A stretch of DNA of 64,000 bases, from contig NC_086385.1 in the NCBI RefSeq assembly GCF_036588685.1, positions 55,017,216-55,081,215 on the forward strand. The letters run 5' to 3'. The notes under the pieces are model-generated. The model was not told the DNA's origin and searched no databases. It was given only the letters and a program-made list of their open reading frames with translations. This DNA is from Mytilus trossulus. Its lineage: Eukaryota. Shown in pieces: positions 1,610-54,953 of the stretch. Both the position numbers and the translations under genes were made by a program. Numbering within the stretch: position 1 is the first letter of the stretch; every line of letters starts with the position of its first letter.

Positions 1610-1651
1610 GTAAAAGAAAGCAAACACTCAGATGTTAGTATTCAGTTTATT
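1610..1651 (-). terminator. Poly(A) signal and cleavage region, copy 1
   Basis: AATAAA (1646-1651, minus) followed by the conserved TGAATACTAACATCTGAG and a U/GU-rich tract. The same block occurs in all four copies. Confidence 0.65.
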
Positions 1652-1922
1652 GACGTTAATAAACGCAACAAAGTAATTTAAACCTCATTGAAAGGTTTTA
1701 TCTGTTTATCATGGAACCTACAGCCTTTGAGTCACGTTCAACTCTTTCCTACAGTGGTAAAACTTCGAACACTTGTATGCCAATTGAATAAAGTAATTGT
1801 AAAATAGAACGACTTTGGTCTTCTTTCTTTTCAATGTTACAATATGAACTGAGCTTACTTTATGTCTTTATTATTAAAGAATAATTAAGATGCAACGTTA
1901 AAGATAACACTCAATCAGGTTG

Positions 1923-2114
1923 TCAAATGCCATTGTCCAGCCCTAATATACTATATAAACATCCTATCTGCTTAGGCATAAGTTTTATCTCATGGTCCAC
2001 AAATATAGCCATGTTCCATCCATTGTCACCAATAGTAAACACCATATTACAAGTTCTTCGTGATTTGCGAAGTCCAGGGTTCAGATTAAAACTAGCAGGT
2101 AATACTACAGACAT
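1923..2114 (-). CDS. Small intronless ORF family, copy 1 (63 aa, MSVVLPASFNLNPGLRKSRRTCNMVFTIG...); unknown function
   Basis: Aligns without gaps to three paralogues (17127-17318, 40318-40521, 54607-54810). Synonymous changes occur at invariant residues (Thr27 is ACT/ACA/ACC). It has a conserved promoter and AATAAA. An in-frame upstream ATG lies at 2177. Confidence 0.75.
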   Translation of the reverse strand: MSVVLPASFNLNPGLRKSRRTCNMVFTIGDNGWNMAIFVDHEIKLMPKQIGCLYSILGLDNGI

Positions 2115-2273
2115 ATTTTCCTGATTGAAATTGATATCAATAATCTTTTTCAATCCTCGATTATAGTTTGAACACATTCAAACAACGTTCTTTCTGTTTC
2201 TTTTAAGTATCAAATGGGATAATTATTTTACAGTTAGATCTAGCTATATACAATTCCTATTGCATTTTTTTCA

Positions 2274-2320
2274 CCTTGATATGTATATAGTGAACAGGCG
2301 TGGTTCCAAATAGGCGTGGT
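2274..2320 (-). promoter_or_regulatory. Putative core promoter of copy 1: twin AGGCGTGGT boxes plus a TATA-like element
   Basis: Boxes at 2296-2304 and 2312-2320 (16-bp period). The TATA is degenerate (CTATATAC / CATATCAAGG). Confidence 0.6.
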
Positions 2321-2659
2321 TTTACTTTTAAGTTAAACATGTAAACTGTTTCAATACATATTTTTATATATGTATAGCAAAATGTCAGGATATTATGATG
2401 AGTCTGTGAATATTAATGTCAATAATAATTATCTCCTCGGCTTTTTATAAAACAATCAATTTTCAGTTTGTTTATCTAACTTTCCAAAATATTTTCTTTA
2501 TTTCAAATAAAAGATCATTAGTGTTTGTGCATACATTTGTATTTTAAGATGTGCATGTATCTGTGCAGTTTTATTTTATTTCATTGCATGTGCAAGGTGT
2601 CACATGCATTACTGATAATGCTAACCTTATTTATCAGATTTTCAGAATTTACAAATTTT

Positions 2660-2840
2660 CCACTGGGTCGATGCTACTGCTGGTGGACGTTCGTCTCCGA
2701 GGGTATAACCAGCCCAGTAGTCAAAACTTCTGGGTTGACATAAATATCAATAATGTAGTAATTTTTATAAACTTCCTGTTTATGAGCGTCACTGATGAGT
2801 CTTATGTAGAATACAATTATAATCCTGGAACCTTTGATTA
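2660..2840 (+). mobile_element. Retrozyme fragment, hammerhead 3' half deleted
   Basis: gagcgtcaCTGATGAgtcttatgtaga is followed by a deletion of GAAAC...GTC. Confidence 0.75.
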
Positions 2841-3427
2841 CAAGTCATAAAGATATTCTTTTTTTTAAATTTGTAATGTAAAATGCTGCATTTAGCAAAA
2901 TTTATATATTTTTTGGCAGAAAAATATTTAACAAACCTTTATGTATATGTCAGATAAAAAAAAATCTGTTGTTGAAAGTCTGAAGTCAGGGTCTTATAAA
3001 ATATTAAGTGACGAGTGTCACAACAAAAGACTAATAGTTAAACTTGTTAGCTTAAATTAATTAATCTATCGATGTCAAATGAATTGATCAGCTTTCAGTT
3101 ACTGTGAGTATTCTTATGTTATTGTAACTTTTGTCTACTCACTGTAGTGTTTGTTGTTAGTGTGGTTGAATCAATATTTGTTTTAAATCAACTTAGTTAA
3201 ACAGTTTCATATTATGTTATCCTGATTTTGTAGTTGCCTTTGAGTCCTGCGTTTTTGTTATACTTTATAACTATTACACCACATCTCCTATAAATGGACG
3301 TATTGAGCATTGGACAAAGGTGTTGTCCACAACACATGTAAGCGTCTGTCCCAAGCAAGGAGTCTGTTATACTGTGGTTGTCGTTGCTACGTGTTTGTAA
3401 AGTTATTGTGGTATAATGTATTGTTGA

Positions 3428-3580
3428 ACAACTTTTTGAAAGTATGGATCCTCAATGCTCTTCCTTTAGTACTTGTTTGGCTTTATGAATATTTAGATTT
3501 GAGCATCACTGATGAGTTTTATGTTGACGAAACGCGCGTTTGGCGTACTTAATTATAATCCTGGTACCTTTGATAACTAT
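3428..3580 (+). mobile_element. Retrozyme fragment with hammerhead (3501-3546; GUU triplet)
   Basis: gcatca-CTGATGA-gttttatgttgac-GAAAC-gcgc-GTT-tggcgt. Confidence 0.8.
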
Positions 3581-4591
3581 TAAAAACAACCCGTTAGTTT
3601 GTGCTTTACTTAAATTTCTGTTAACCGGTCCAGCACAATTTCAGTTTATGTAGGGTTGGTTTTCTCCGTTTTTCAGCTTTTAGTGTGGTTCTATTTATGG
3701 TTGAGACCATAACTGTGTTTGTTTCGCTCTTTTTGTTTTCTTATACGCCAATCAATGTATTTTTCATTCCGTATGGAGATTGGTGATTTGCGAACTAAGA
3801 CAAACACTGCTTGTTACGCCCTAATGACATAAATATTGTATCAAAAACGTCAGCAACCCAATTTTGTACTTTCTCATTTCTATGTTGAAACATTTCAGCA
3901 GGCCTTCACACGGAGTTCATATAAATCTCATAGTTGATATTCGAGGGCTTTGTATGTTGATCATTATTTCCTCGATAGAGTGTTGCTGCTCAAAAGGAAC
4001 ATATTACACCTATTAAACCAAGATTTCCAAGTGGTGAAGTTGAAATAATTTCTTCATTACTCCGGACGCCATCGCGAGTTCGTTGACTGTTATGAATGAA
4101 GAAGGATATGTTCAAACTGTCAAAACATTCATCACAGACCTCTAAAGTGACCTACAAATTCAGACATATCACCGATATCACAAAACTTTGAATAGGGTAA
4201 TTTTTGGTCAGTCTTTTGATTTTGTGTAGTGTTGCTTGTCTGTATCTCCTTAGCCATGGATATTAATTTTGACTTATGAGTTTGAATGTGCAATTTGGTA
4301 ATATTAGGTACACAATTATTTCGTAGTGCAAATCTTTTAGACAATAAATCAAAATTCAAAAGATCTCACCTGTGCTTTCTCAATAAGAATGTTTTACAGT
4401 GTATTGTATTACTTTTTTGACAAATTATATCAAAATTATAGAAAATGTCATCGGCTCTAACTCAAAAAGTGGACAATTTTATGTTAAGGGGTCTTGGAAT
4501 CTTTTGACAGCTTCAGAAGTTCCAATTTGTATATTTTTTTAATTCCTTAACTTGCTATTTGAGGTATAAAACATAAAAATTACATTAAGAT

Positions 4592-5320
4592 ATGGAACGC
4601 CAACACTGTCTTGTTATGACCATTTTCATTATATGATGTGCATTTACCTTTATATGAAGTGCATTTACCTTTATATGCTGTGCCTAAACCTTTAAATGAT
4701 GTGCACTTGTCATTATATGATGTGCAAACACCTTTATATGATGTGCAAATATCCTTATATGATGTGCAAATATCCTTATATGATGTGCATATACCCTTAT
4801 ATGATGTGCAAATATCCTTATATGATGTGCACACATCATTATATTATGTGCACACATCATTATATTATGTGCAAACATACTTATATGATGTGCATATATA
4901 CTTATATGATTTGCAAATATACTTATATGATTTGCAAATATACTTTTATGATGTGCAAACATTCTTATATGATGTGCAAGCATTATTATATGATGTGCAA
5001 ATGTACTTATATTATGTGCAAAGATCCTTATATGATGTGCAAGTATACTTATATGATGTGCAAAGCTCCTTATGTACTGTGTACATATCATTATATGAGG
5101 TGCAGTTTCCCTTATATTACGTGCAAACATCTTTATATGATGTGGTTGTGTCATTATATTATGTGCTTGTAATCTTATATGACGTGGTAAGGTTTACTTC
5201 ATTATGTGATGTCGAAACGTCATTATATGATGTGCTTTCATCGTCGTTATGGTCAATGAACATGATTACGATTAGAATGATTACTGTCTACGTCATAGCT
5301 GAGTCCGATCTGCTTCTGTA
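4592..5320 (+). mobile_element. Non-autonomous element with an internal 21-bp minisatellite (ttatatgatgtgcaaatatcc)n
   Basis: Unique ends (atatggaacgccaacactgtc...; ...ccgatctgcttctg) and the array are shared with an inverted copy at 11128-11774. Confidence 0.75.
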
Positions 5321-5863: not shown

Positions 5864-5906
<43 letters not shown>

Positions 5907-7800: not shown

Positions 7801-7979
7801 ATAAAAAAATATATAAACACGTGCGTTTATCCTCCAGCTGGCTTAGTAATTTTGAAACCTCTCTCTCTTGTTTTGTATATACTGTAAATAGTTTTTATTT
7901 TTATCTCTGTATACTGATGTTATACAGTGACTTTGTGAGCTTAAATATTTAGATTTAGAGGCCATAAGTATACCGGCAT

Positions 7980-11127: not shown

Positions 11128-11774
11128 GCAGAAGCAGATCGGAATCAGTTATGACGTAGACAGTAATCATTCTAATCGTAATCATGTTCATTGACCATAA
11201 CGACGATGAAAGCACATCATATAATGACGTTTCGACATCATATAATGAAGTAAATAAAACCACATAATATAAGATTACAAGCCCATAATATAATGACACA
11301 CACACATCATATAAAGATGGCTGCACATAATATAAGGGAAACTGCACATCATATTATGATATGTACACATCATATAAGAATATTTGCACAGCATTTAAGT
11401 ATATTTGCTCACCATATAAGGATCTTTCAATATAATATAAGTATATTTTCACATTATATAAGAATGTTTGCACATCATATAAGTACATTTGCACATCATA
11501 TAAGTATATTTGCACATCATATAAGTATATATGCGCATCATATAACTATGTTTGAACATCAAATAATGATGTTTGCACATCATATAATGATGTTTGCACA
11601 TCATAAAATGATGTTTGCACATCATATAAGGATGTTTGCATATCATATAAAGGTGTTTGCATATCATATGATTGCAAGTGCACATCAGATAATGGTAAAT
11701 GCACATCATATAAAGGTAAATCCACAACATATAATGAAAAATGGGCATAATAAGACAGTGTTGGCGTTCCATAT
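11128..11774 (-). mobile_element. Second, inverted copy of the 21-bp-array element (fewer units)
   Basis: Reverse-complement homology to 4592-5320. Confidence 0.75.
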
Positions 11775-11944
11775 TAAGAAGAGGTATAAAACATATTGCC
11801 AGGTAACAAAACTTTCCACACTAGGAATTATACTAGTGGACAACGAAAACCAATGGACGATAACTGTGTTCCCGGACCTTCTCGTTTAGTTTTACTCTGG
11901 CTCCTTAAAGTACATCCCGCCAATGTTTTATAATGTAAAACATC

Positions 11945-12410
11945 GATCCCTGACTTTTCCTCCTAAGGTTGATACTTTTATTATGTATACATCTTGTCAG
12001 GTTTATATCACGTCCTTGACCTTGTCGAGTTGGTACCATGTTGTAGTATATTGCATGTCTCTTTTCTTCAATCTACGCATTTTTTATCTTCGTTGGTGCG
12101 TATTTCGCACCTCTTTTAATAATTTTACATTTTTTTTCTTATCTCAGTTCTTTGCCGATTGAATTAAAACATAACTGCACATAAACCCACTTCAAAGTGT
12201 AGTGTATATTATTTTTTTTCACATCCGACAGACATGTATTTTTTATGCAAAAACATTTTTAAAAACTGAAATATTCAACACTTAAATTAGATACATGGGC
12301 TGAATGACGTGTGTGACGCCTCTGAAATAAACTCATCAAAAAAATTTAAATATCATAGATTTTTTTTAATCCCGACTTTGTTTTCCGATAAGATTCTTTC
12401 TAAGAAGAAT
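11945..12410. promoter_or_regulatory. Repeated conserved non-coding element (CNE), copy 1, with paired TGACG sites
   Basis: Homologous to five other blocks in the window. TGACGTgtgTGACGC lies at 12305-12319. No conserved ORF. Confidence 0.5.
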
Positions 12411-16679: not shown

Positions 16680-16718
16680 CAACAAAAAGTCAACTGAGAT
16701 GTAAGTATTCAATTTATT
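16680..16718 (-). terminator. Poly(A) signal, copy 2
   Basis: AATAAA at 16713-16718 within the conserved 3'-end block. Confidence 0.65.
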
Positions 16719-16800
16719 GTAGTATAACAAGTTGAACAAATTATATATATAATATTATATCACAGTGCATTCATAACTACTGTCAGTACATCAAAGCACA

Positions 16801-16932
16801 TTTTAGTTTTCTATGTTGTGTCATGTGTACTATTGTTTTTCTGTTTGTCTTTTTCAGTTTTAGCCATGGCGTTGTCAGTTTGTTTTTGATTTATGAGTTT
16901 GACTGTCCATTTGGTATCTTTCGTCCCTCGTT
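16801..16932 (+). mobile_element. 3'-terminal fragment of the Naiad-type element, in the 3' UTR of gene copy 2
   Basis: Matches ~63438-63570 and is absent from copies 1, 3 and 4. Confidence 0.85.
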
Positions 16933-17126
16933 TATAGGCATCATCTGCTTATTATGAAACCGAACTTTAGATCACTGTTGTATCGATTAACTGAGGTCAT
17001 TGTACTAAACAACGAATGCAGGCTTCCATCTTTTCAAGGTAACATTTAGAAGATGATGATTCTTTATGTTCTTCTTATTAAAGAATAATGAATACACAAC
17101 GTTAGAGGTAAAACGCCATCAGGTCT

Positions 17127-17318
17127 TCAACTGACTGTGTTCAATCCTAATATACTACATGAACTTCTTATCTGCTTAGGAATATTTTTTTCCTCCTGGT
17201 CCATATCAATAATCGTGTTCCGTCCATCTGAACCAATTGTAAACATCATATTGCAAGTTCCTTTTGATTCTCGAAGTCCAGAAATCAGATTTGAAGTAGC
17301 TGGTAATACTAGAGACAT
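17127..17318 (-). CDS. Small intronless ORF family, copy 2 (63 aa, MSLVLPATSNLISGLRESKGTCNMMFTIG...)
   Basis: Ungapped paralogue of copy 1. TATATAAAAG lies upstream (~17456-17465) and AATAAA at 16713-16718. Confidence 0.75.
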   Translation of the reverse strand: MSLVLPATSNLISGLRESKGTCNMMFTIGSDGRNTIIDMDQEEKNIPKQIRSSCSILGLNTVS

Positions 17319-17455
17319 CTTTTCCCGTTTTAAACTGATATGTATTTGTTGTTGCAAATCCTGGTAATGTTTTGAAATAACATTCAAATAACTTTCTATC
17401 TGTTCCCGTAACGTACTTCACAGATCTAATATTTAACACTTCTGTTCTATATTCA

Positions 17456-17498
17456 CTTTTATATAAAGTTAATAGGCGTGGTGCTAAACAGGCGTGAC
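17456..17498 (-). promoter_or_regulatory. Putative core promoter of copy 2
   Basis: Boxes at 17474-17482 and 17490-17498 (16-bp period), followed on the minus strand by TATATAAAAG. Confidence 0.7.
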
Positions 17499-18885
17499 TT
17501 TACTATTAAGTTGAAAATGTCAACTACATCAATAAATGATTCCAAATGTTTAATAGCAAAATGTCATGATATTGGGAAGAGTCTGTGTATATAAATGTCA
17601 ATAATAATTTATCTTCTTGGCAATGTATTCAACAATTTAAGTTTTCTCTATCGATTGGTGGATTTCGAACAGCGGTCTTCTACTGTTGCCTTTAACTTTA
17701 CATCAACATACATGTATTTGTCAACATATTTCCTTTGTTTCGAATAAAATGTCCCTTATCGTTTCGTTTTATTTTTTCTCTATGAGTTTATTACAAGGTG
17801 TGCCTATGTCTGTTTCAGGGTTTAAAAGAATTGGGATGCATACAGTACTATTGGTACCATATGTCGAAGCTACGGTCTCGAATCTGTTGCAAGAACATGT
17901 GATTCCTTTTTTTTATTGTTGTGTTTTTTTTGTGGGTTTTTTTTTTGTGCTTTGAATTTTATTTATCGATTGCATTGATAAAATTTGCACATCGATTAAA
18001 TACTGTTGCCTGTATTAAAAAGACCTGTTTGTTTTTAATTATATCTTAAAATAGTCATCAAATATGTGAATAGAAAAAAAGAAATGGTATTGTTTTTTTG
18101 TTTTTTTTATTTCATTATGCAATTAATATAATAGATTTTCTTTTTTAATTGTTCCTTGGTATTTTTTGTGGTTTTTATATTTTGCATGGATTTTTTTAAT
18201 CCAAACAATGGAATTTTCTTTCAGAAACTCCAGGACTCCTTTCATGTGTATCACGCATAAATATATCACAATGAAATCATAACAGTTGTTATCTAGTAGT
18301 TCAAAATAGTTTTCCTTTTATAGTTGATTTGTTTCCCTCGGTTTTAGTTTGTAAACCGGATAGTTTTTCTCTCAATGGATTTATTACTTTTGAACAGCGG
18401 AACTCCGTGATTTAACAACACGTAAATCAAGGAAGTATTCAAACCTCTACAAATGCAAGTTGAAATGCGTAAAATAGTACAACAGTACTCAAAATATGAC
18501 ATTAAATAAAAAAAATGCTAAATTCATCTGAGGTAAATTTTGCCTATAGAGAGTTAGAACCTTTGTTTCACTTTAATCTATGAATAGAAAAGATTGAATA
18601 AGAAAAGGATTGTCATAGGACTGCCATACAACAATCATTAATGGCTTTATCAGGGAGGAAACGGTTCAATCGGTTTATTATTCCATTGACAAATATAAAA
18701 CTCGTGATCGAACAACACTAATTGTCATGCTGTTTGGTCTCCCTTTAAGTTTTTTTCTTTCAAAATTTTAAACTTTTGGATTATTTATTCTCTCAATGTG
18801 AACGGAGCAGCATTCTAGCGGCGCCTACATACGAATTAAATATCTCCCAATTGATGCGATATTCCAAGTCTTGTATTTTCTATCA

Positions 18886-25590: not shown

Positions 25591-25626
<36 letters not shown>

Positions 25627-38716: not shown

Positions 38717-39242
38717 TACGATAATAGAGTTAATTTACTCGAATAGCTGCATCACAAAAGACTAATAACGGTAAATCAATCTATATCCGTACCACATACA
38801 TGTAACTGCCTAACAAGCCTTTGTTTATTGATAATTTTCACTAAAAGATAATTGGAAGAGTAAAAGAGACAAATCTGAAGAAAAAAGGTATGGTCAGATG
38901 TGGTGTGAGTGCCAATGAGACAACTTTCCATCCAAATAACAATGTATGGAAGTAAACCATTATAGGTCAACGTAAGACCTTCGAAGCCTGCTATCTACCT
39001 ACACAAAATGCACACAGTAGCTGCGCGTATACTCCAGTAGATGTTGAAATTGCATCTGGTCACGTTATAATAATTAAACGGAAAAAAAGAGGGGAAAATG
39101 AATTACTTGCAAGCTTCGCAAACGTGTATTAAGATTTTGTATAGCTTCGTCTGCGCCAAACGGTACCCATTTTGTCCGACATAATTGTTCTACCTTTTCT
39201 TAGAAAAAAACATACAAGTTTAGAAACGAAGTAGTTAATTTG

Positions 39243-39512
39243 AAAAATGGACTTTGACATTAATTATAAAGTGCTTGTGTTATTTTGTATGCTTCTTATG
39301 ACGTCTTTAAACACACAGTTTAGTGAAAAGGCTGTGAAAATATCGAAATATAACAATGGCATTTCTCATTTGCCATACAACTTTTAATTATCAACTGTGA
39401 AACAAATAACAACATACCTTGCTCTTTGACACTGAATTATATTTATATTAAATTTGATTAATTCGATCGACAAACAACTTCCTCAAAGAGAAGGTCAAGG
39501 AAGTATCATGAA
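39243..39512 (+). repeat. Diverged inverted homologue of the CNE (others at ~29345-29595 and at 49910-49983 + 53610-53812)
   Basis: ATTAATTCGATCGACAAACAAC on + matches the reverse complement of GTTGTTTGTCGATCGAATTAAT in CNE3. Collinear blocks include aaaaatg(g)actttgac, TGACGTC and ctgtg(a/g)aa(a)tat. Confidence 0.6.
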
Positions 39513-39984
39513 TCTGATTCACCATCAGTGATACAAATGTATGTTTGGTGCTTGCATGCATATTGTTGACAATGTAGTATGGACTTTGTGCATTGTTGAT
39601 GTCCATACGCTGACCTTTAACTGATAATATAGTTGATAGTTGTCTCAATAGAACCATACTGCCTCTTCTTATTTTTATATGTTTACCACAACCACTTTTA
39701 TATGTGCCAACAAGCCCGTTATTCAGTGGTTGTAGCCTATAGTATTTTTTATTGTTTCGTTATATGTTTGGTTGGATTCCGATGCTGTGGTGTCTGACTA
39801 TACTTCAATGTTTTTTCTCATTGTTGAAGGTCGTTATATGCCCTGCATTCTACATGATTTGGATATTGATGACATAATATTTTTTGTCGAACACTCACAT
39901 CATCTGTCAAGCATGTGCGTTTGACTCAAACAATTATATTGATATAATAATTATTCATCTCAATTAGGTGTTAGTCAGTTAAAT

Positions 39985-40024
39985 AAAACAAATTCTCAGC
40001 TCAGATGTTAGTATTCAATTTATT
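39985..40024 (-). terminator. Poly(A) signal, copy 3
   Basis: AATAAA at 40019-40024 within the conserved 3'-end block. Confidence 0.65.
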
Positions 40025-40317
40025 GTATAAAAACCAAAAGCAACAAATTATATTCGTAATGTTTTAGCACATTGCATGTGAAAACACTGTCATAAGCACA
40101 AAGCACATTGAAAGGCTTAATCTGTTGATAATGAAACAAAACTTTCGATCAATGTTATATCGATTGAATGAGTACATAGTACAATTAAAGGATCTCGGCC
40201 TTCTACCTTCCAATTAAATTCTCGGGCTTCTACCTTTTCAATGTTATATTTAGAAGATGAGCTTACTATATGTCCTTATTACTATAAAATAATTAAGATA
40301 TGATGAAGAGGTAGAAC

Positions 40318-40521
40318 TCAATCACTTTGCCAACCACCAGTCTTCATTCCTGTTATACTATGCGAACGTTTCATTTGTTCATGTTTCCGTTTTGAATGCT
40401 GGTCCATAAAACTAGTCAAGTTTCGTTCATTGTCATAAATGGTAAACAACATATTGCAATTTTGTCTGGATTTGCAAAGTCCAGGAATCAGATTTGAACT
40501 AGCAGGTAATACTAATGACAT
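40318..40521 (-). CDS. Small intronless ORF family, copy 3 (67 aa, MSLVLPASSNLIPGLCKSRQNCNMLFTIY...)
   Basis: Ungapped paralogue. TGG replaces the TGA stop of copies 1/2, adding 4 aa. An in-frame upstream ATG lies at 40584. Promoter and poly(A) signal are conserved. Confidence 0.75.
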   Translation of the reverse strand: MSLVLPASSNLIPGLCKSRQNCNMLFTIYDNERNLTSFMDQHSKRKHEQMKRSHSITGMKTGGWQSD

Positions 40522-40676
40522 CTTTTCCTGATTGAAACTGATATTGATAATCTTTTCCAGTCCTCGATAATATTTCGAACACATTCAAATAACTTCCTTT
40601 CTGTTTCTTTTAAGTATCAAACGTAACAATCACTTTACAGTTAGGTCTAATCTAAACATTTTCTGTGTCATTTTCT

Positions 40677-40723
40677 CTTTTATATGTTTCAAGTAAATAG
40701 GCGTGGTATCAAATAGGCGTGGT
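40677..40723 (-). promoter_or_regulatory. Putative core promoter of copy 3
   Basis: Boxes at 40699-40707 and 40715-40723, followed by CATATAAAAG. Confidence 0.65.
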
Positions 40724-41277
40724 TTTACTCTAATTTTATAATGTTAAGTATATCACTAAATGATTCCAATTACTTAATTGCAAAATGTCACGATATCAGT
40801 CTGTGAATATAGATGTCAGTTATAATTGTCTGCTCGGCATTCCATTTAACAATTTCAGTTTACATTGTTTATCATATTATGATATTTCCTTTATTTCGAT
40901 TAAAAAAAAACTCAAATCCGTTCGTTGCATATTTGTCTCTACATGTTTATTTAAAGATGTGCATTTGTCTATGCATTTTATGTTATAAGCTGCGATGTCT
41001 TACATGTCAAAGAAGATCTCATTCCTTTAGTTTCTTATTGTTATTATTTTCTGTTGTGCTTTGAACTTTATTAAATTATTGCATTAATGATATTTTAACA
41101 TGTTTTAAATTATATTATAAAATAGTCATCACACATGTGAATAGAAAAAAGAAATGTTGCTTTTTGTTATTTCATTATGCAGTTTTGCAACTCGATTTTG
41201 AATAAATTATTGATCAGTTTTTCGGAAATCAATTTTTTTAAAGAGATTGTTTTGATTTAAATGTAAAATCCTGGAAT

Positions 41278-41510
41278 ATATATCACATTGCATAGCGGGT
41301 TATATTCACGGGGGGGGGGGGGGGGGGGGGGGGGCTGATTTTCATTGAATAATGTATACGAAATATTTTGGTGGTTATTAATTTGGAAGATCCAATACCT
41401 TTGCATGTGCACTTGTAAATTTTAAACGGACTTTATTTAAGCGATTTTGTTTTATCCGCGAAAATAAGCGAAAATTTGCACTCAGCGATAATAATCCGCT
41501 AAACGGTATT
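41278..41510. mobile_element. MITE-like element containing a G25 run (paralogue ~55498-55732 with G26)
   Basis: Inverted ends tagcgggtta.../...taatccgcta; poly-G at 41310-41334 and 55528-55553. Confidence 0.55.
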
Positions 41511-42559
41511 ATAGACATATTTGCGAGAAGATGTAACCTGTATCTGAAGAAAAACAAATTATCTTGCTGATTGTTTAAGATTTTATTTTTGTTAAACTGC
41601 TAAACCACTGTTAAATTACAGGGAAGGATATCGCCCCAAAATTACAAGCTATATTGGAAACTAACTTTTATGTCAATTCGGTCTTTGGTAAACAATTTTA
41701 AAATCAAACCACCATATCTTCTTTTTCTATTTCTATAAACTTGAATAAACCTTATTTTTTCTCCTGAAAAAACTGTTGAAATGAAAGACATTCACCATAA
41801 CAGTCAGTACCTATTCACCTACCATTAACTCAAATATACTTGCTTTATTCTAGGATTGAAATTTCCTCGTTTGTTGAACCCATATTCCAATCGAACTGAG
41901 TATAAAGAATACATTTTTTGACTCATATCTAAACATTTAAAACAGTAAGGGTCGGTTAAAAACAAAACGTAAGGACAACAAAGCTGATTTCAGCTTCCAA
42001 ATTTTTAATTTACTAATTTCTCTGTAGTAACATTTCAACAGCGAAAAATATTTTAATCATTTTATTGTTTATCATGATTTCTTTGATATAGGTATGCTGC
42101 TAAATTTAAATCAATCAATCCAAGAGTTTTAAGTGATGAAATTGAATGTATCCCTCCGTTAATTCTTCGGAGGCAATTACGATTATGTTAATCGCTATGG
42201 AAAATTCCTTTCACAGATGACGTCGGATTTGTTTCAACTGTCGAAAGAACAATCCCGTCTCCTCCTTAACGAATGTTGCCTACTAAATCAGACTTATCCT
42301 CGAGTAAGTACTTATATGAGCAACACGACGGATGTCACATGTCAGGAATGATCCTCTTATAAATCTTAAGGACTTATATCACTGCAATCAGGCTAGTTTT
42401 GATTGGGGTTCAATTTGCTCAGTCAATTGTTTTTTGTTGTGTTGTTTGTCTTTTTCAATGGCGTTGTCAATTTATTTTCGACTTTTGAGATTGAATGGCC
42501 TTTTGTTATTGTTGGCCTCTTGTTAAGTTTTACTCTGACTCAAGAATGTATAGCCCGCT

Positions 42560-43863
42560 TATCCGAGGCACAGATTACCTTAGCCATAATGGCACCTTTT
42601 TTTTTTAATATTGGACTCAATGCTCTTCAACTTTGTATTTGTTTGGTTTATAACTATTTTGATATGAGCGTCACAGATGATTCTTGTGTAGACAAAACGC
42701 GCGTCTGCCGTTCTTAATTATAATCCTGGTACCGCTGTTAAATATTTACACCATTGGGTCGATGCCTCTGCTTGTGGACGATTCGTCCCCGAAGGTATCA
42801 CCAGCCCCGCAGTCAACACTTCGGTGTTGACATGAATATCAATTATGTGGTCATTTTTCTAAATTTCCTGTTTACAAAATTTAGAATTTTTCGAAAAACT
42901 AAGGATTTTCTTATCCCAGGCATAGACTATATGGTCATTTTCAAAAATTTTCTGTTAACAAAACTTTGATTTTTTTTAAAAGCTAAGGATTTTCTTATCA
43001 CAGGCATAGATAACCTTAGCCGTATTTGGCACAACTTTTTTGTAATTTTGGGTCCTCAATGCTCTTCTTTGGCTTTCTAATTGTTCTGAGCTGAGTGTCA
43101 CTGATGAGTCTTATGTAGACGAAACGCGCGTCTGGTGTTATTAATTATGATCCTGGTACCTTTGCTAACTATTTGCACCACTGGGTCGGTGCCTCTGCTG
43201 GTGGACGTTTCGTCCCTGGAGATATCTCCATTCCAGTAGTCAACACTTCGGTGTTGACATGAATATCAATTATGTGGTCATTTTTATAAATTTCCTGTTT
43301 ACAAAATTTTGACGAAAAACTAAGGATTTTCTTATGCCAGGCATAAATTACCAAAGCCGTAATTGACACTACTTTTTTTTTGGAATTTTGGATCCTAAAT
43401 GCTCTTGAACTTTGTCTTTGTTTGGTTTATAACTATTTTGATATAAGCGTCACTGGTGAGTCTTATGTGGACGAAACGCGCGTCTGGTGTACTAAATTAT
43501 GATCATGGTACCTTTGCTAACTATTTACACCACTGGGTCGGTGCCTCTGCTGGTGGACGTGTCGTCGTCGAGGGTATCACCAACCCAGTAGTCAACACTC
43601 CGGTGTTCACATGAAAATCAATTATGTGGTCATTTTTATAAATTTCCTGTTTACAAAACTTTGAATTTTTCGAAAAGATAAGGATTTCTTTTTCCCAGAC
43701 ATAGATTTACTTAGCCGTATTTGGCACAACTTTTTCAAAATTTGGATTTTCAATGCTCTTCATTTTTGTATTTGTTTGGTTTATAACTATTTTGATATGA
43801 GCGTCACCGAAATGCGCGTCTGGCGTACACAATTATAATCCACGTACCTTTAATAACTATTTA
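42560..43863 (+). mobile_element. Tandem retrozyme array (~352-354-bp monomers; four hammerhead positions)
   Basis: Cores at ~42673 (mutated), 43101 (intact), 43453 (CTGGTGA) and ~43807 (core deleted). Confidence 0.9.
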
Positions 43864-43867
43864 CCGA

Positions 43868-44340
43868 TTTTATCATGTAGCGTATCCTTCACGTTTCTCG
43901 TAAGGTTGATGCCTTTATCATTTATACCTAATATTTATTTTATATCATGCTACAAACATCCCTGACCTTGCCAAGTTAACGTTGGCACCACGTTGTAGTA
44001 TATTGCATGTCTCATTTTCTTCAATCTTCACATTTTGATCTTTGCTGGTACCTATTTCGCACCTTCTTTTAATTTTACACGAAGTTTTTGTCTTAGATCA
44101 GTTGTCGATCGAATAAATAAATACCTGCAAATATATAATTCACATTTAAAGTGCAGTATACATTTTTATTGTCATTTGACAGACACTTATTGTGTATGCA
44201 AAAACTTGAAATATTCCACACCTAATTAAGATCTATTTGCTGAATGACGTACTTAACGCTTCTGAAATAAACTCAGAAAAAAAATTAAAGTGTATCTTTT
44301 TTATTACCGACTTTGTTTTCCGATAATATGTTTATCAAGA
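43868..44340. promoter_or_regulatory. CNE copy 4
   Basis: TGACGTactTAACGC at 44245-44259; homologous to the other copies. Confidence 0.5.
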
Positions 44341-44474
44341 AAAAAAAGTCTAGTAGGCCTAATTGTGTGTTGAAAACCTTTTAAAACCTTGTGACTTGCA
44401 TTTAGATTTGTATCATCATCACTCTTTTATATACATGTTTATATACATGTAATAGCAAATATGACAAGGAGATA

Positions 44475-44880
44475 AATAAACTCATCATATATACCAGGAC
44501 TAAATTTAATATATACGCCAGACGTGCATTTCGTCTACAAAAGACTCATCCGTGACGCTCGAATCCAAAAAAGTTGAAATATAGCCAAATAAAGTACTAG
44601 GTTGAAAAGCATTGAGATCCAAAATTCTTAAAAGTGTTGCCAAATACAGCGAAAGTAAAAAATGCCTGAGGTAGAAAAGCCTTAGTATTTCAAAAAAATT
44701 CAAATTTGGTAAACAGTTTATTTATAAATATAACAATATCAATGATTATTCATGTCAGCACAAAAACTGCTGACTACTGGGCTTGTTATACCCTCGGGGA
44801 AATAAATCTCCACCAGCAGTTGCATCGACCCAGTGGTTGAAACTAAACTCATCATAGATACCAGGACTACATTTAATATA
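44475..44880 (-). mobile_element. Retrozyme monomer of a second subfamily (~367-bp period), hammerhead mutated
   Basis: Terminal redundancy aaactcatcata.ataccaggacta at ~44478 and ~44845; core reads CGGATGA...GAAAT. Confidence 0.85.
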
Positions 44881-47329: not shown

Positions 47330-47675
47330 AATGATTGTATCATGTGTTTCTTAAAATTGTTCACATGTCGACCTTTTTTTCCTTGTGTTGCTGTTAAATT
47401 GGTTATCATACATCTCTCGAATCATCCTTCAAAAGCGTGATATTGACATTGCGTTTATTGTTTGTCGATTAAATTAATAGATGTCAGCATATATATATAG
47501 CTTACATTTAAAGTGCAGTTAATATTTTTGATATTTGGCAGACATGTTATTGGCATCTTTTATAGAAATATTCCACAGTTGTATTTGTAACAACGTCTTA
47601 ATGACGTAATTGACGCTTTTGAAATAAACTCAAGAACCAAAAAAAAAGGTCAAAGTCATTTTTTTCATTACTGAT
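47330..47675. promoter_or_regulatory. CNE copy 5 (most diverged)
   Basis: TGACGTaatTGACGC at 47602-47616. Shares the ttgtttgtcgat, acatttaaagtgcag and aaatattccaca blocks. Confidence 0.45.
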
Positions 47676-49983
47676 GGTATGATATAATATTAGAATTTTA
47701 TATTATATACAAGGACATTTTAAAGACGATTTCTTTACTTTATCTCAATAAATCTTGATTGATACTTTATTGAGTCACTCTCATGATAAGGAGGTACAAA
47801 ACATTACAGTTGAGTGCATACCAAGTATAACATAAAGTAAACACACGTTAACAGCGTTTGTATATATTTTATTATTATACAACAATTTTAGCGTTTGCTT
47901 GTAAACGCACATTTACTATAATTCCGTTCATGCTTTCGAAATGGAAATTTTTGATTTTTTCCCCAGTTAACGCGCGTTTATTATGTGTCCGTTTAGCTTG
48001 AAACGGGCGTTTCCTACAGATTCGACACGTGCACTTGAAATAATTTCGCTACATTTGTACATTATTTTTAATTTGTTAAAAATACATTTATCTAAATAGT
48101 TAACGAATCTGTTTATAGAACTGTAACAATTCAAAAACACTTTTAATTCAAAATATTAACGTTTATTAATTGCTCAAAATCAGTTCCAAAAACTTTAACA
48201 TGTTTGAAAAGGGGATTTTTTATAAAAAAATAAATCAAAAGTTACAAGTACTGATATAAATATCGACTCAGAATGATATTTCCTTTCTAGAACATTATCT
48301 GATTGTACCAACTCATTTCTATCTTCAGTACATTTTTTGCCTGATCTTCTTGAACTCATCCACAAATATAAACTGAAAATCTTGTTGGTTTTACAGTCCC
48401 AGGATAAATATTTCCTTTGTACTTCTTTACTATTATCATCTTTCAATTCCTTGGAATGTTATATCATAAACTCTAATCGCCAATACGTCAATCATAAATA
48501 AACAGTTGGCCATTTTAATGAAACTTGAATTATGTTAAGTCACTGTACCAAGATTGTGATGACAATCTGCGTTAACGCACGTAAACTACAAACACTTAAC
48601 GTGCACTTACTTTTTACTAAAACAGATATCGCGCCTTTCTTCCTTCACGTTAACGCGGCAGTAAACGTGAAATTTGGTTTACTCTTTTAAAAATTAGAAG
48701 AGGCGTTATTTTGCGTTAACGCGTAGATAAATAAAGGCAACAGGAGTATACCGCTGTTCGAAATTAATAAATCGATTGACAAGAAAACAAGTACGGGTTT
48801 CGAACTAAAACTGAGGGAAACACAATAACAGAGAACCACGACACAACAGAAACAAACGTTTAAAAATCTACCTTTTTATATGAAAGCACGCTTTTGCAAC
48901 TATGCAGTGAAATAAAAACAAACTAAAACCGATACATGATTTAAGGCAAATATTTTATAAGTATTCAATTATCCACTCATTTCTATAAGGAAGTTTATTC
49001 TAGCGATAAAATATTTACATTGTAGTTATTATGCGGAGCATATGCATAAGCCATTAAAAAATGAAAGTGTTAAATGTCATAACCACACTCCTGTTCCCTT
49101 TCCACAAATATGACCTATCTAATTAGACTATTAATCGGATTTGTAATCACGTGAGAAACAAGACAAATGTCACATGTTGATCAGGATCTGATTGCCTTTC
49201 CGGAGTACCTAAGATCACTTCCAGTTTCTGGTGGGATTCATTATACTCAGTCTTTATTTTTATTAAGTGTGTTTTGTGTACCATTATGTATCTCTCTTGT
49301 CTTCTTTAACCATGGCGTTCTTCTTTTTTTTTTTTATTTATGAGTTTGAATTTCACTCTGCTATCCCCCGTTCGGCTTTATTAAAACGGTATTGATGTAG
49401 TAAAACTAAACATATTCGCATGACAATCGGATATCATGTACTTAAAAAAAATGGTTTTATATTAAAAATTCAACGTAGAAATCTTCTATGGTTAATTGAT
49501 AATTTTCACAAAAAGATAATCGGAAGAGTAAAAGAGACAAATCTGAAGTAAATAGGTATGGGAAGATGTATTGTGAGTGCCAATGAGACAACTTTCCATC
49601 CAAATAACAATTTATGGAAGTAAACCATTATAGGTTAACGTACGACCTTCAAAGCCTGCTATATACCTACACAAAATGCACACAGTAGCTGCGCGTATAC
49701 TCCAGTAGATGTTGAATTTGCATCTGTTCACGTTATAATAATTAAACGCGAAAAAAGAGGGAAAAATGAATTACTTGCACGCTTCGCAAACGTGTATTAA
49801 AATTTTGTATAGCTTCGTCTGCGCCAAACGGTACCCATTTTGTCCGAAATAATTGTTCTACCTTTTCTTAGAAAAAACATACAAGTTTAGAAACGAAGTA
49901 GGTAATTTGAAAAATGTACTTTGACATTAATTATAAAATGCTTGTGTTGTTTCTGATGCTTCTTATGACGTCTTTAAACACAC

Positions 49984-52900
49984 TTATCATACTTACTTAC
50001 TTAATCCTCTTCGTGCATACTCGCACATGAGGCCACTACCAACGCCCTCCACTGTTGCCTGTCTTGTGCCTTTCTTTCTGCTTCTCCCCATGTCATTCCC
50101 ATGGCTCTTAGTTCGCTTTCTATTGTACGTCGCCATGTCTCTTTAGGTCTCCCTCTCTTTCTTTCCCCCTCTGCTGGTGTCCAACGAAGAGCTATCCTTG
50201 TGATGTCATGTTTGTCTTGCCGTAGAACATGGCCTATCCGTTTCCATCGCCTTTCTTTAATTTCAACTCTGATGTCTCGTTGTAAGGTTAGGGTGTATAG
50301 ATCTTTATTAATGATGGTTTTTGGCCAGAAGATCTTGCAAATTTTCCGAAGACATGTATTGTGGAAAGATGACAGTTTGTTGAAGTCAGATTTTATAACC
50401 CTCCATGACTCTGCACCATATAGCAAAACTGATTTTACATTACTATTATATATTTTGATTTTTGTGGACCTGGATATTGATGTTGTTTTCCATACTGTTC
50501 GTAATCTGCAGAAAGAAGTTCTGGCTTTGTTGATCCTTGCCATTATATCTTTGCTAGTGCCGTTGTCCTGGCTGATGTTAGTACCTAGATAAGTAAAATT
50601 TTCCACTTCTTCTATGTTGTCTCCTTTAAGAGTTATGGGTTGTTAACTAGTTTTGTCATTAAGACTAATTATCTTTGTCTTTTGTGCATTTATCTTTAAA
50701 CCTACAGATAGAGCAGTGTCATGTAGTCTTGATGTTTTGTTCTTCGTGTTTGCTCTAGTTGTTGATAAAAGGCATATGTCGTCTGCAAAATCTAGATCTT
50801 CTAAGATTGTGTTCATCGACCATCTTATTCCAGTTACTCTATTGCCTAGTGTTCTTCTCGTGCACTAGTCGATGACAATGAGGAAAAGAAGGGGAGAGAT
50901 GACGCATCCTTGTCTTACTCCAGATTGTACATTAATCCAGGTGGATTTGGTTCCATTGTGTAGGACACAGCATCTGTAGTTGTTGTAAAATAATTTAATC
51001 ATGCTAATTATTTTCTCAGGTATGCCATACGATCTCATTATGTCCCACATGCTGTCTCTGTCCAAGCTATCAAAAGCCTTTTCAAAGTCCACATAGTTTA
51101 TGACGATGTTGTGTTGCCATTCTATGCACTGCTCAATGATGTTTCTGAGTGTGAATATCTGGTCACTGCACCCTTTATTGGCTCTAAAACCTGCTTGTTC
51201 ATTCCGCAGGGTGTCATCTAAAGCATCTACTTTTCGCTTGGCAATAACTCTCAGGAAAACTTTTGCAGGTACAGACAGTAGAGATATACCTCTCCAGTTG
51301 TTGCAATTTTTCATGTCACCTTTCTTGGCAAGTTTAACTAGTAGTCCTTCCTCCCAGTCTTCAGGTATATTTTCATCCTCCCATATTTTGCTAAATAGTG
51401 TTTGCAGTATTGATGCTGTTGTTTCCACATCTGCCTTAAGGAGTTCTGCACTGATGTTGTCTACTCCAGCTGATTTACTATTTTTTAGCTTGCATAATGC
51501 TTTCTTTATTTCACCAAGTTCAATTTTTTCTTCTCATATATCAATTTCGATCTTGTCTTCAGTGTTATCAAATAGAGCTGGTTTGTCTGGTGGTTCTCTG
51601 TTCAGAACTTCCCGAAAGTGCTCTGCCCATCTTTCAAGTTTCTGTGCTTCTGATGTTATTACCTCTCCATTCTTGCTTAAAACTGGTGTGTCATTGTTGT
51701 TACTTTTACCACATAGCTGTTTAGTGATCTTATATACAGTACTTAGTTCTCCATGTTTGCATGCCTCTTCTGCTTCATTTGCCAATCCTTCAATGTATTG
51801 TAATTTGTCTTCTCTAGCTTTTTTCTTAACTTCTTTATTTAGCTCTGATTATTCTTTTTGAAGCTTTTCTTTCAACCTTTCTGATCTTGCCTGATTGCAC
51901 TTGCTTTTTGTAGATCTTCTCTTTTCAATAACATTCCAGGTTGTATCTGGAATCCACCTTTTCCTTGTACTGTCTCTAATTCCAAGTACATTTTCAGCTG
52001 TATCGTTAAACATAGTTTTTACTTTGTTCCAATGTTCATTTAAATCAGGACCAATGTTGTCGTGGTTTTCACTGATAGTGTGTAGTGTTTGGTATTGGTT
52101 TCTTATGCTGATGTTGAATTTTTGTCTTATTAGATTGTCTTTGAGGCGGTGGATGTTATATATTTTTCTGTTATGCTGTGGTCTGGCTACCTTTCTCAGT
52201 TTAAGTTTAATTTTCCCAAGTAGAAGGTGGTGGTCACTTCCACAATCGGCTCCCCTTTTGACACAGACATCCATCAGAGACTTTCTCCATCTTCCATTTA
52301 TAATTATGTGGTCTATCTGGTTTTGGTCCCTGCCATTTGGTGAGTTCCATGTTAGTTTGTGAATGTCCTTGTGTGGAAATAAGGAACCTCCAATAACTAG
52401 ATCATTCAAGCCACATAAATCTACTAAAAGTCCACCATTTTCATTTCATTCTCCACATCCATGTCTGCCCATTATTCTTTCCTTACATGAGTTATCTAAC
52501 CCAATCTTTGCATTTAGATCACCAATTACAAGACATAAATCATGTGCTGGTACTTTACTGATAAGGGATTGTAATTTGTCATAAAACTTATTCTTGTCCT
52601 CAATACTAGCTTCGTTGGTAGGTGCATAGCATTGACTCACTGACAGTTTTGAGTATTTTGAATAAAACCTTGCCATAATAAGCCTTTCATCCACTGGTTG
52701 CCATTCTAGAAGAGCTCTTTTTGATTCCTTGCTTAGTACTAAAGCAACTCCCTCATAGTGTTTGTTGTCTGTTCGGCCTGAGTACAATATGGTCTTACCT
52801 GTGTCCGTTGAGATCGATCCGTTGTTTAACCATCTGCATTCACTGACACCTAGTATACTGATGTTATACCTTCTCATCTCATTGACAACTTGTGCTGTTT

Positions 52901-53608
52901 TTCCCGTCTCATACATGGTCCGCACATTCCATGCCCCTATGCTGAGAACATTTTTTGGCGTTAAGAGTCCACACTTCTTGCCCCTAGCTGCATTTCTGCT
53001 TTCACTAGACACATTCATTGGGTCATCTGTATGACGTATGTCCTCGTTCACGCAATTCAGTGTTTCTTTTGGTGTGGTTTCCGTAATCAGCTTCTTTTTA
53101 CTCTGCCTGGTGATTAGCCATGCGAGAAACCTAATTCCTGCAGGGCGGAGTTTTGCTGTCTGGGTGTTCTTTCCCATAGATGATTGCCTGCCATGGCTGA
53201 TGAGTTCCATCTTTCCAGCTTTTCTTTCTGGGTCTGCTCCCATAGCCTTTGATCTTCCAAGATCAAACCACAAGGCAGTGGTACTATTTACCCATAGTTG
53301 GGACAAGGTTGATGAGTGTAAGGGCGTGTCCATACGCCGATGGGCCTACACACTGCATCTCTGGGGCCCTTGCTGCTCCGAGATCCTCTACAATAATGCC
53401 TAGAATGCTAAATCCTAGTTACCATGTGCTGTCGCGAGGAGGCATTGTAGAAGTCTTGAATAGTGTAGAGGCTATGTACTGGCAGAAAGACTTAGGCGAT
53501 CGGCTTTCTTTTCACCTGCAATGCAGGCTAGCCAGCGGTGATAGAGAGCCTATGGCTCTAACCACACTAGACGCTTGCACAATCCTGTGGAACAAACCAC
53601 CAGCACAC
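49984..53608 (-). mobile_element. Full-length RTE-clade non-LTR retrotransposon (APE + RT), inactivated by stops and frameshifts
   Basis: APE motifs (IGAWNVRT, GVSECRW, GDLNA, QIDHI, SDHH) and RT motifs (GVRQGC, FADD). The ORF ends directly in a (TAAG)n tail. A ~7-bp TSD aacacac/aacaaac lies at 49977-49983 / 53610-53616. The paralogue at ~39305-39320 shows the empty site. Confidence 0.95.
53385..53608 (-). ncRNA. HDV-like self-cleaving ribozyme at the RTE 5' end
   Basis: P1 GTGTGCT (53608-53602) / AGCACAT (53430-53424) with a G1-U wobble; P2 CTTCTACAAT / ATTGTAGAGG; P3 GCC/GAC; L3 TCCTCGC; P1.1 GG; P4 CTAGGAT/ATTCTAG; J4/2 GCATT. Confidence 0.85.
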
Positions 53609-54287
53609 TAACAAACAGTTTAGTGAAAAAGCTGTGAAAATATCGAAATATAGCAATGGCATTTCTCGTTTGCCATACAATTTTTAATTATCAACTGTGA
53701 AGCAAATAACAACATGCCTTGCTCTTTAACACTGAATTATATTTTTATTAAATTTGATTAATTCGATCGACAAACAACTTCCTCAAAGAGAAGGTCAAGG
53801 ATGTATCATGAAACTGATTCAACAGCAGTGATACAAAGTTATATTTGGTGCTTGCATGCATATTGTTGACAATGAAGTATGGACTTTGTGTTTGTTGATG
53901 TCCATACGGTGATCGTTAACTGATTATATAGTTGATAGTTGTCTCATTGGAACCATACTGTATCTTCTTATTTTTATATGTTAAACACAACCACTTTTAT
54001 ATGTGCCAACACGCCCGTTATTCAGTGGTTATAGTCTATGGTATTTTTTATTGTTTCATTATATGTTTCAATGCATTCCGATGCTGTGGTGTCTGACTAT
54101 AATTTAATGGTTTTTCACATTGTTGAAGGTCGTTATATATATGCCCTGCATTCTACATGATTTGGATATTGATGACATAATATTTTTTGTCGAACACTCA
54201 CATCATCTGTCAAGCATGTGCGTTTGACTCAAACAATTATATTGATATAATAATTATTCATCTCAATTAGGTGTTAGTCAGTTAAAT

Positions 54288-54327
54288 AAAACAAATTCTC
54301 AGCTCAGATGTTAGTATTCAATTTATT
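54288..54327 (-). terminator. Poly(A) signal, copy 4
   Basis: AATAAA at 54322-54327 within the conserved 3'-end block. Confidence 0.65.
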
Positions 54328-54606
54328 GTATAAAAACCAAAAGCAACAAATTATATTCGTAATGTTTTAGCACATTGCATGTGAAAACACTGTCATAAGC
54401 ACAACGCACATTGAAAGGCTTAATCTGTTGATAACGATCAATGTTATATCGATTGAATGAGTACATAGTACAATTAAAGGATCTCGGCATTCTACCTTCC
54501 AAATAAATTCTCGGGTTTCTACCTTTTCAATGTTATATTTAGAAGATGAGCTTACTATATGTCCTTATTATTATGAAATAATTAAGATATGATGAAAAGG
54601 TAGAAC

Positions 54607-54810
54607 TCAATCACTTTTCCAACCACCAGTCTTCATTCCTGCTATTCTATGTGAACGTTTCATCTGTTTATGTTTCTGTTTTGAATGCTGGTCCATAAAA
54701 CTAGTCAAGTTTCGTTCATTGTCATAAATGGTAAACAACATATTGCGATTTTGTCTGGATTCGCAAAGTCCAAGAATCAGATTTGAACTAGCAGGTAATA
54801 CTAATGACAT
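54607..54810 (-). CDS. Small intronless ORF family, copy 4 (67 aa), recent duplicate of copy 3, possibly decaying
   Basis: Ten substitutions versus copy 3 (8 non-synonymous, 2 synonymous by hand count). A ~75-bp 5' leader deletion removes the upstream ATG. The ORF is intact. Confidence 0.65.
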   Translation of the reverse strand: MSLVLPASSNLILGLCESRQNRNMLFTIYDNERNLTSFMDQHSKQKHKQMKRSHRIAGMKTGGWKSD

Positions 54811-54906
54811 CTTTTCTCTTCTTTTCTGTTTCTTTTAAGTAGCAAACGTAACAATCACTTTACAGTTAGGTTAGATCTAATCTAAACATTTTCTATTTCA
54901 TTTTCT

Positions 54907-54953
54907 CCTTTATATGTTTCAATTAAATAGGCGTGGTGTCAAATAGGCGTGGT
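54907..54953 (-). promoter_or_regulatory. Putative core promoter of copy 4
   Basis: Boxes at 54929-54937 and 54945-54953, followed by CATATAAAGG. Confidence 0.65.

What the first reader, a model, noticed from the sequence alone, without database searches (positions are those of the whole stretch)
1610..54953. Tandem family of four unrecognised intronless microprotein genes with complete Pol II architecture
Seen in sequence: four minus-strand ORFs (1923-2114, 17127-17318, 40318-40521, 54607-54810) align with no indels or internal stops over 63 codons, while their flanks are full of indels. 22 residues are invariant (M1 S2 V4 L5 P6 A7 N10 L11 G14 L15 S18 N23 M24 F26 T27 I28 N34 D40 K44 Q49 I56 G58), several through synonymous codons. 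Each copy keeps a twin-box + TATA promoter and a conserved AATAAA block. There is no signal peptide, transmembrane segment or domain I recognise. Inference: a lineage-specific, fast-evolving intracellular microprotein family in birth-and-death evolution, small enough for annotation pipelines to miss. This is the best candidate for an undescribed system in the window.
Basis: partly seen in the sequence, partly recalled or inferred. Interest (0 to 1): 0.85.

Follow-up and report, generated by a model that had tools for sequence, protein, structure and literature searches.

The report
Mussel-only cluster of six tiny genes
A mussel genome carries six clustered copies of a compact, apparently intronless unit whose 63-codon reading frame has stayed open far longer than chance allows, so it is probably an unannotated lineage-restricted small-protein family; expression is untested and the peptide sequence itself drifts almost freely.

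Summary
The four minus-strand ORFs exist and align without indels. Each has the same upstream box, twin CCACGCCT boxes, a TATA-like box and a conserved AATAAA block. The family is larger than reported: the 1.3-Gb genome has exactly six copies, all within 150 kb of one contig and all open. The genome is a mytilid mussel, since it has myticin genes.

Four copies also carry an in-frame ATG 21 codons upstream, giving 84-88 aa. Under neutral simulation, all six keep the ATG and an open frame in at most 1.5e-4 of runs. Indels are about 12 times rarer in the ORF than in the rest of the unit.

There is no protein-level constraint. dN/dS is about 0.5-1.2, third codon positions show no excess variation, and replacements are as radical as random mutation would give. 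Only the N-terminal MS(L/V)VLPA and a few scattered residues are fixed.

Among about 15 billion database proteins only six unnamed relatives turned up, and no Pfam, PDB or Rfam match. The AlphaFold model is poor (pLDDT 53).

Verdict: probably a real but young, taxonomically restricted small-ORF gene family. This kind is common in Mytilus, so interest is modest.

The parts
1625..2470 (-). Copy c1, whole conserved unit (promoter-like region to just past the AATAAA block)
   Evidence: Self-BLAST and six-way alignment. Upstream box 2377-2393, twin boxes 2312-2319 and 2296-2303, AATAAA 1646-1651. The TATA-equivalent is degenerate (TATCAA) by alignment.
1923..2177 (-). c1 ORF: 63 codons from the conserved ATG at 2114, or 84 codons from the upstream in-frame ATG at 2177
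16690..17650 (-). Copy c2, whole unit, with an insertion of about 150 bp in the 3' untranslated part
   Evidence: Upstream box 17556-17572, boxes 17490-17497 (TCACGCCT) and 17474-17481, TATA 17458-17465, AATAAA 16713-16718.
17127..17318 (-). c2 ORF, 63 codons. The upstream ATG is put out of frame by a 2-nt indel, although the frame itself stays open.
39995..40871 (-). Copy c3, whole unit
   Evidence: Upstream box 40780-40796, boxes 40715-40722 and 40699-40706, TATA 40677-40684, AATAAA 40019-40024.
40318..40584 (-). c3 ORF: 67 codons from the ATG at 40521, or 88 codons from the ATG at 40584
54300..55100 (-). Copy c4, whole unit. It is a recent duplicate of c3 (about 94% identical) with a 66-bp deletion that removes the leader and the upstream ATG.
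   Evidence: Upstream box 55010-55026, boxes 54945-54952 and 54929-54936, AATAAA 54322-54327.
54607..54810 (-). c4 ORF, 67 codons

Best explanation
This is a taxonomically restricted (mytilid mussel) tandem family of six compact genes.

Anatomy of each about 0.9-kb unit, all shown in the sequence:
- an upstream box (ATATCnTGACATTTTGC);
- two direct CCACGCCT boxes 16 bp apart, an arrangement found nowhere else in the genome;
- a TATA-like box about 22 bp further on;
- a leader of about 70-135 nt;
- an uninterrupted ORF of 63-67 codons, or 84-88 from an upstream ATG in four copies;
- about 300 nt of trailer;
- a nearly invariant block of about 26 nt around AATAAA, after which the homology ends.

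Inferred, not shown: each unit is transcribed on its own by RNA polymerase II into an unspliced poly(A) RNA of about 0.65 kb. That RNA would be translated into a 7-10 kDa peptide that is not secreted and is largely unstructured.

Selection keeps the frame open and keeps the N-terminal MS(L/V)VLPA. The rest of the peptide changes about as fast as silent sites. The likeliest mode of action is therefore a short N-terminal motif on a loosely constrained body, as in a young or proto-gene, rather than a folded domain. The biochemical role is unknown.
For: - Copy number and place: six copies, all in C13:55.02-55.17 Mb and all open.
- Unit architecture is conserved in all copies, and homology stops just after the AATAAA block.
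- The twin box occurs only in this family genome-wide.
- Neutral HKY simulation on the estimated tree (length 0.85 substitutions per site): all six keep the ATG and an open frame in 0 to 1.5e-4 of 20,000 runs. Counting stops only, the figure is 4e-4 to 2e-3.
- Indels: about 7 frameshifting indels are expected in the ORF at the rate of the rest of the unit. None was observed, and the only indel is 9 nt and in frame.
- Out-of-sample copies c5 and c6 are both intact, with p about 0.09 each, so about 0.008 together.
- Only this sense frame has 0 stops in all six copies. Four of the other five frames have 2-8.
- The relatives from other samples are full length and share the same start and stop. They are P0004 (c1-like), P0002/3/7/8 (c2-like) and P0001 (c5-like). 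The longest contig recorded for P0002 and for P0004 has the same length (8,567 bp, ENA), which suggests, but does not show, that the two lie on one contig.
- No signal-peptide-like or membrane-spanning stretch; pI ranges from 6.1 to 10.1.
- Recently expanded, taxonomically restricted families of short genes with simple architecture are reported as common in Mytilus (PMC7653742).
Against: - No RNA or peptide evidence could be obtained.
- There is no protein-level constraint. Pairwise Nei-Gojobori dN/dS is 0.5-1.2, and up to 2.8 for c4-c5.
- Variable sites by codon position are 37/29/32 of 59. The number of amino-acid differences and the BLOSUM62 scores of replacements match random mutation.
- The ORF is no more conserved at nucleotide level than the leader and promoter-like region.
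- The AlphaFold2 model is poor (pLDDT 53, pTM 0.22). The ESM Atlas gave no look-alike.
- The finding was picked for being open, so the four-copy statistics carry ascertainment bias.
- Gap counts in AT-rich flanks probably overstate the indel contrast.
Confidence: 0.55

Rival explanations
1. The unit is duplicated non-coding DNA, transcribed or not, and its ORF has no function. All copies remained open through chance, plus the fact that the scan selects open frames.
For: - dN/dS is about 1, there is no third-position excess, and replacements are as radical as random.
- The ORF is not better conserved than its flanks.
- No homologue, domain or confident fold was found.
- An antisense frame is also nearly stop-free, so the stretch is somewhat stop-poor.
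Against: - The joint probability of no stop, a retained ATG and no frameshift in six copies is very low.
- c5 and c6 were not part of the ascertainment, and both are intact (p about 0.008).
- The only ORF indel is a multiple of three.
- Relatives in other samples are full length.
Confidence: 0.2
2. The functional product is the RNA or the locus itself, not the peptide. The frame would stay open only because translation stabilises the transcript. Alternatively, the unit belongs to a longer transcription unit that begins in the upstream 'B' element, 3-9 kb away on the same (minus) strand.
For: - Promoter-like region, leader, ORF and trailer are all conserved to the same degree.
- Nucleotide-level invariance around the ATG includes silent positions.
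- A second cluster-specific non-coding unit B sits upstream of each of c1-c4.
Against: - Each unit has its own TATA-like box and AATAAA block, and homology ends right after the latter.
- An in-frame TGA lies directly before the upstream ATG in c1, c3, c5 and c6, so no coding exon can join in frame there.
- No convincing splice acceptor precedes the ORF (by eye).
- No Rfam family matches the unit or B.
Confidence: 0.15
3. The unit is a small mobile element, or cargo carried by one.
For: - Homology is limited to about 0.9 kb with sharp ends.
Against: - Only six copies exist, all in 150 kb of a 1.3-Gb genome.
- There are no convincing terminal inverted repeats and no transposase or reverse-transcriptase domain.
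- The flanking repeat is a genome-wide 353-bp satellite.
- Duplicons also carry the B unit, and c3/c4 lie in a segmental duplication of at least 5 kb.
Confidence: 0.03

Closest known systems
[quoted passage not shown] 2020, PMC7653742)
   Same: Short ORF, simple gene architecture, local tandem expansion, no functional annotation, and restriction to the mussel lineage.
   Different: Presence-absence variation and expression were not tested here. This particular family is not named in any text searched.
Young or de novo 'proto-genes' and small-ORF microproteins (from my own knowledge of that literature)
   Same: An ORF under 100 codons, no homologue, a poor structure prediction, and dN/dS near 1 with an intact frame.
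   Different: Here the unit has a well-conserved promoter-like module of its own. It has persisted long enough to reach about 30% nucleotide divergence between six copies, which is old for a proto-gene. No parent or ancestral non-coding locus was identified.
Mussel antimicrobial peptide families (myticin, mytilin, myticalin)
   Same: Small, clustered, fast-evolving, mussel-restricted genes. Myticin genes are present in this genome.
   Different: The new peptides lack a signal peptide and a cysteine array. They do not match PF10690 or any other Pfam family, and the ORF is uninterrupted.
Drosophila Reaper/Grim/Sickle (small clustered inducible proteins whose only conserved part is an N-terminal motif; from my own knowledge, analogy only)
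   Same: A peptide of about 65 aa, clustered paralogues, and conservation concentrated in the first seven residues.
   Different: The IAP-binding motif (Ala-x-Pro/Ala-x exposed after Met removal) is absent; here the sequence would be Ser-Leu/Val-Val-Leu. There is no sequence similarity. This is not a member.

Membership tests
Protein-coding gene under selection | Reading frame kept open (no stops, no frameshifts, start codon retained) beyond the neutral expectation | tested here: met
Protein-coding gene under selection | Purifying selection on the amino-acid sequence (dN/dS below 1, third-position excess, conservative replacements) | tested here: not met
   Power is limited (63 codons, about 40 synonymous sites), and only paralogues could be compared at DNA level.
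Protein-coding gene under selection | Transcribed and translated | not testable with these tools
Transposable element | Many dispersed copies, terminal repeats, or a transposition enzyme | tested here: not met
   Six clustered copies, no convincing inverted terminal repeats, no Pfam domain
Mussel antimicrobial peptides (myticin, PF10690, and similar) | Signal peptide, conserved cysteine array, and a match to the family profile | tested here: not met
   No Pfam match. Maximum 11-residue hydropathy is 1.3-2.6 and there are 1-3 Cys at non-conserved positions (alignment).
Known non-coding RNA families (Rfam 15) | Match to a covariance model | tested here: not met
   No match at gathering score in the window, nor at E up to 1 over the c3 unit
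Reaper-like IAP antagonists | N-terminal Ala-x-Pro/Ala-x motif after Met removal | tested here: not met
   All copies start Met-Ser-Leu/Val-Val-Leu-Pro-Ala. The motif definition is from my own knowledge.

The most novel reading that the evidence does not exclude
A mussel-specific family of translated microproteins in which only an N-terminal heptapeptide, MS(L/V)VLPA, and the mere existence of a tail of about 60 residues are under selection. The family would be switched on through a dedicated twin-box promoter found nowhere else in the genome. In other words, a new inducible, motif-based regulator, for example a docking or degradation signal acting on a conserved host protein. It would have arisen without a detectable parent gene and would be expanding by tandem duplication.
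Probability: 0.2. Interest if true: 0.55.

Novelty: new member of a known kind. Interest (0 to 1): 0.35.

Why it matters
If expressed, the family adds a clean and tractable example to the large, mostly uncharacterised pool of lineage-restricted short genes thought to underlie mussel adaptability. It offers six paralogues with a unique, simple promoter module, and a peptide whose only fixed part is seven N-terminal residues. It is also a useful test case for how a frame can be kept open while the sequence drifts. If it is not expressed, it is a warning that conserved open frames in duplicated AT-rich DNA need RNA evidence before being called genes.

Tried and rejected
Tools that gave nothing or were unavailable:
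I instead simulated from extant copies.
I reran it from files.
- The JGI metagenome scan found no relative. The full-text search for the peptide words found nothing.

Hits and ideas rejected:
- P0005 and P0006 (about 960 aa, 'hits') are translations of tandem satellite repeats. Their E-values come from summing weak repeats, and their Pfam rows have 0 stretches.
- A structure search was not run because the model is too poor (pLDDT 53).
- Antisense-strand gene: one antisense frame has 0-1 stops. However, c2 has no ATG in it, c3-c6 share a stop, and its second codon position would be the most variable.
- First exon of a larger gene: rejected because of the conserved stop, the conserved trailer and the AATAAA block.
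- tRNA-derived SINE: no tRNA-like gene was found.
- Assigning the twin box to a factor from memory (KLF/Sp-like CACCC box, or the GCGTG core of bHLH-PAS sites) is only a lead. Neither consensus is matched fully.
Full report
**Observation**

The four minus-strand ORFs translate exactly as described. A four-way and then a six-way alignment shows a shared unit of about 0.9 kb at about 70% identity. Outside it, similarity falls to background. The 22 residues listed as invariant are invariant among the four, some through different codons.

Each copy carries these features at matching distances from the ATG:
- an upstream box (ATATCnTGACATTTTGC, about -275 from the ATG);
- two direct CCACGCCT boxes 16 bp apart (about -201 and -185);
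- a TATA-like box (about -163, degenerate in c1);
- a nearly invariant block of about 26 nt around AATAAA at about +480 to +600.

Homology ends about 40-60 nt after that block.

**Extent of the family**

A DNA search and a profile search of the window's own 1.3-Gb assembly both find exactly six copies, all on contig C13 within 150 kb. Five lie on the minus strand 14-23 kb apart: c1-c4 in the window and c6 about 12 kb beyond it. The sixth, c5, lies 73 kb further on the plus strand. Both extra copies have the full unit and an open frame.

The exact twin-box arrangement occurs nowhere else in the genome.

c3 and c4 belong to a segmental duplication of at least 5 kb (85-94% identity). In copy 4 this duplication is interrupted by a 3.6-kb LINE.

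The genome has eight matches above cut-off to the myticin family PF10690. This fits the 'Mytilus' label given in earlier scan notes.

**The ORF**

In c1, c3, c5 and c6 an in-frame ATG lies 21 codons upstream, directly preceded by TGA. This gives 84-88 aa. c2 has lost that ATG through a 2-nt indel, and c4 through a 66-bp deletion. c1 and c2 end four codons early (TGG to TGA), and the ancestral-looking stop is shared by all copies.

**Is the frame kept by selection?**

- The ORF tree has a length of 0.85 substitutions per site, and about 4-6% of possible substitutions create stops.
- In neutral HKY simulations started from extant copies, all six kept the ATG and an open 63-codon frame in 0 to 1.5e-4 of 20,000 runs. 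With the stop criterion alone the figure was 4e-4 to 2e-3.
- The rest of the unit has 38 gap events in 652 columns, 74% of them not multiples of three. The ORF has one, of 9 nt. About 7 frameshifts were expected, so P(0) is about 9e-4.
- The four window copies were chosen for being open, so I treated c5 and c6 as an out-of-sample test. Each has about a 0.09 chance of being intact under neutrality, or about 0.008 for both.
- Only this frame has zero stops in all copies. One antisense frame has 0-1, and the other four have 2-8. The antisense frame lacks an ATG in c2 and is most simply a by-product of the sense frame.

**Is the protein constrained?**

No.
- Pairwise Nei-Gojobori dN/dS is 0.5-1.2, and up to 2.8 for c4-c5. 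It is no lower than in the two wrong frames.
- Variable sites by codon position are 37, 29 and 32 of 59.
- Given the observed nucleotide differences, the number of amino-acid differences and the BLOSUM62 scores of the replacements fall in the middle of the random-mutation distribution.
- The ORF is no better conserved than the leader or the promoter-like region.
- What is fixed is the N-terminal MS(L/V)VLPA plus L11, S18, T27, D40, K44, Q49 and I56 across twelve sequences. Around the ATG the silent positions are also largely fixed.

**What it resembles**

Nothing known.
- No Pfam family reaches significance. There is no PDB sequence match, no Rfam match and no ESM Atlas look-alike.
- AlphaFold2 with the 12-row alignment gives pLDDT 53 and pTM 0.22. 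It weakly suggests a hairpin and one helix.
- The peptides are 6.8-7.8 kDa. Their pI ranges from 6.1 to 10.1, and they have no membrane-spanning or signal-like hydrophobic stretch.
- Two whole-database protein searches find only four 90% clusters holding six sequences, all unnamed, from Logan and ENA assemblies. They are a c1-like 63-aa protein, c2-like 82-aa proteins and a c5-like 89-aa protein. All are full length and share the same core start and stop.
- The longest contig recorded for the c1-like and for the c2-like protein has the same length (8,567 bp, ENA). This suggests, but does not show, that they are neighbours there too.
- Two long 'hits' are translated satellites and are spurious.

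**Context**

- The window is otherwise rich in repeats: LINE fragments, a genome-wide 353-bp satellite and other tandem arrays.
- A second cluster-specific unit, 'B', is about 450 bp long, has five clear copies and is found only in this window genome-wide. One copy lies 3-9 kb upstream of each of c1-c4.
- B has no ORF conserved between its copies and no Rfam match. Weaker B-like pieces lie near c5 and c6.
- The old duplicon was therefore at least B plus the gene. This argues for tandem segmental duplication rather than transposition.

**Interpretation**

The best reading (0.55) is a real, young, mussel-restricted family of compact genes. Their product would be a small, non-secreted, largely unstructured peptide acting through its N-terminal motif. 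Selection is visible only on frame integrity. Transcription, lack of introns and translation are inferred from motifs, not shown.

Rivals:
- a functionless ORF kept open by chance and ascertainment (0.2);
- an RNA-level or locus-level function, or membership of a longer transcript (0.15);
- a mobile element (0.03).

Recently expanded, taxonomically restricted short gene families of unknown function are reported to be common in Mytilus (PMC7653742). This is therefore a new member of a known kind rather than a new kind of system.

**Limits**

Noticed in passing
window 11880-12394, 23513-24009, 34227-34622, 43884-44329, 58254-58697 (+); weaker at 47458-47674; L021:1633-1919, L021:7962-8264, L023:8008-8307, L024:7505-7836: A second conserved non-coding unit ('B', about 450 bp, 72-77% identity) is found genome-wide only in this cluster. 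One copy lies 3-9 kb upstream (on the minus strand) of each of c1-c4. It has no ORF conserved between copies and no Rfam match. It contains two TGACG-like boxes and a palindrome around an ATATATAA motif. It could be an enhancer, an alternative promoter or an unknown RNA gene.
   Followed up: partly
window 1923-2114, 17127-17318 and the other ORFs, plus strand: One antisense frame across the ORF has no stop in c1 and c2 (79 and 91 open codons) and a single shared stop in c3-c6. Four other frames have 2-8 stops. It is probably a by-product of the sense frame.
   Followed up: partly
window 38823-44723 versus 49491-49983 plus 53610-59054: A segmental duplication of at least 5 kb carries c3/c4, the B unit and satellite arrays (85-94% identity). 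In copy 4 it is split by a 3.6-kb LINE with endonuclease and reverse-transcriptase ORFs (50001-53333, minus strand). The LINE insertion is therefore younger than the duplication. Rfam at gathering score reports no HDV-like ribozyme at 53385-53608, the place flagged by another first-reader note.
   Followed up: partly
window 38289-38713, 42558-44723, 56768-59054: A satellite with a period of about 353 bp has thousands of candidate copies on many contigs of the genome. This is the 'inverted non-coding element' said to bracket copies 3 and 4.
   Followed up: yes
window 31270-32829; 4590-5320 and 11129-11774: A tandem array with a period of about 94 bp (92-95% identity between units). Separately, two inverted copies of a short-period tandem array lie 6 kb apart.
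   Followed up: no
window 24706-25389 (-), 19531-20031 (-), 62596-63270 (+): Further retroelement fragments (zf-RVT, weak RVT_1). The stretch 19060-19849 is 96% identical to 62499-63294 in inverted orientation.
   Followed up: no
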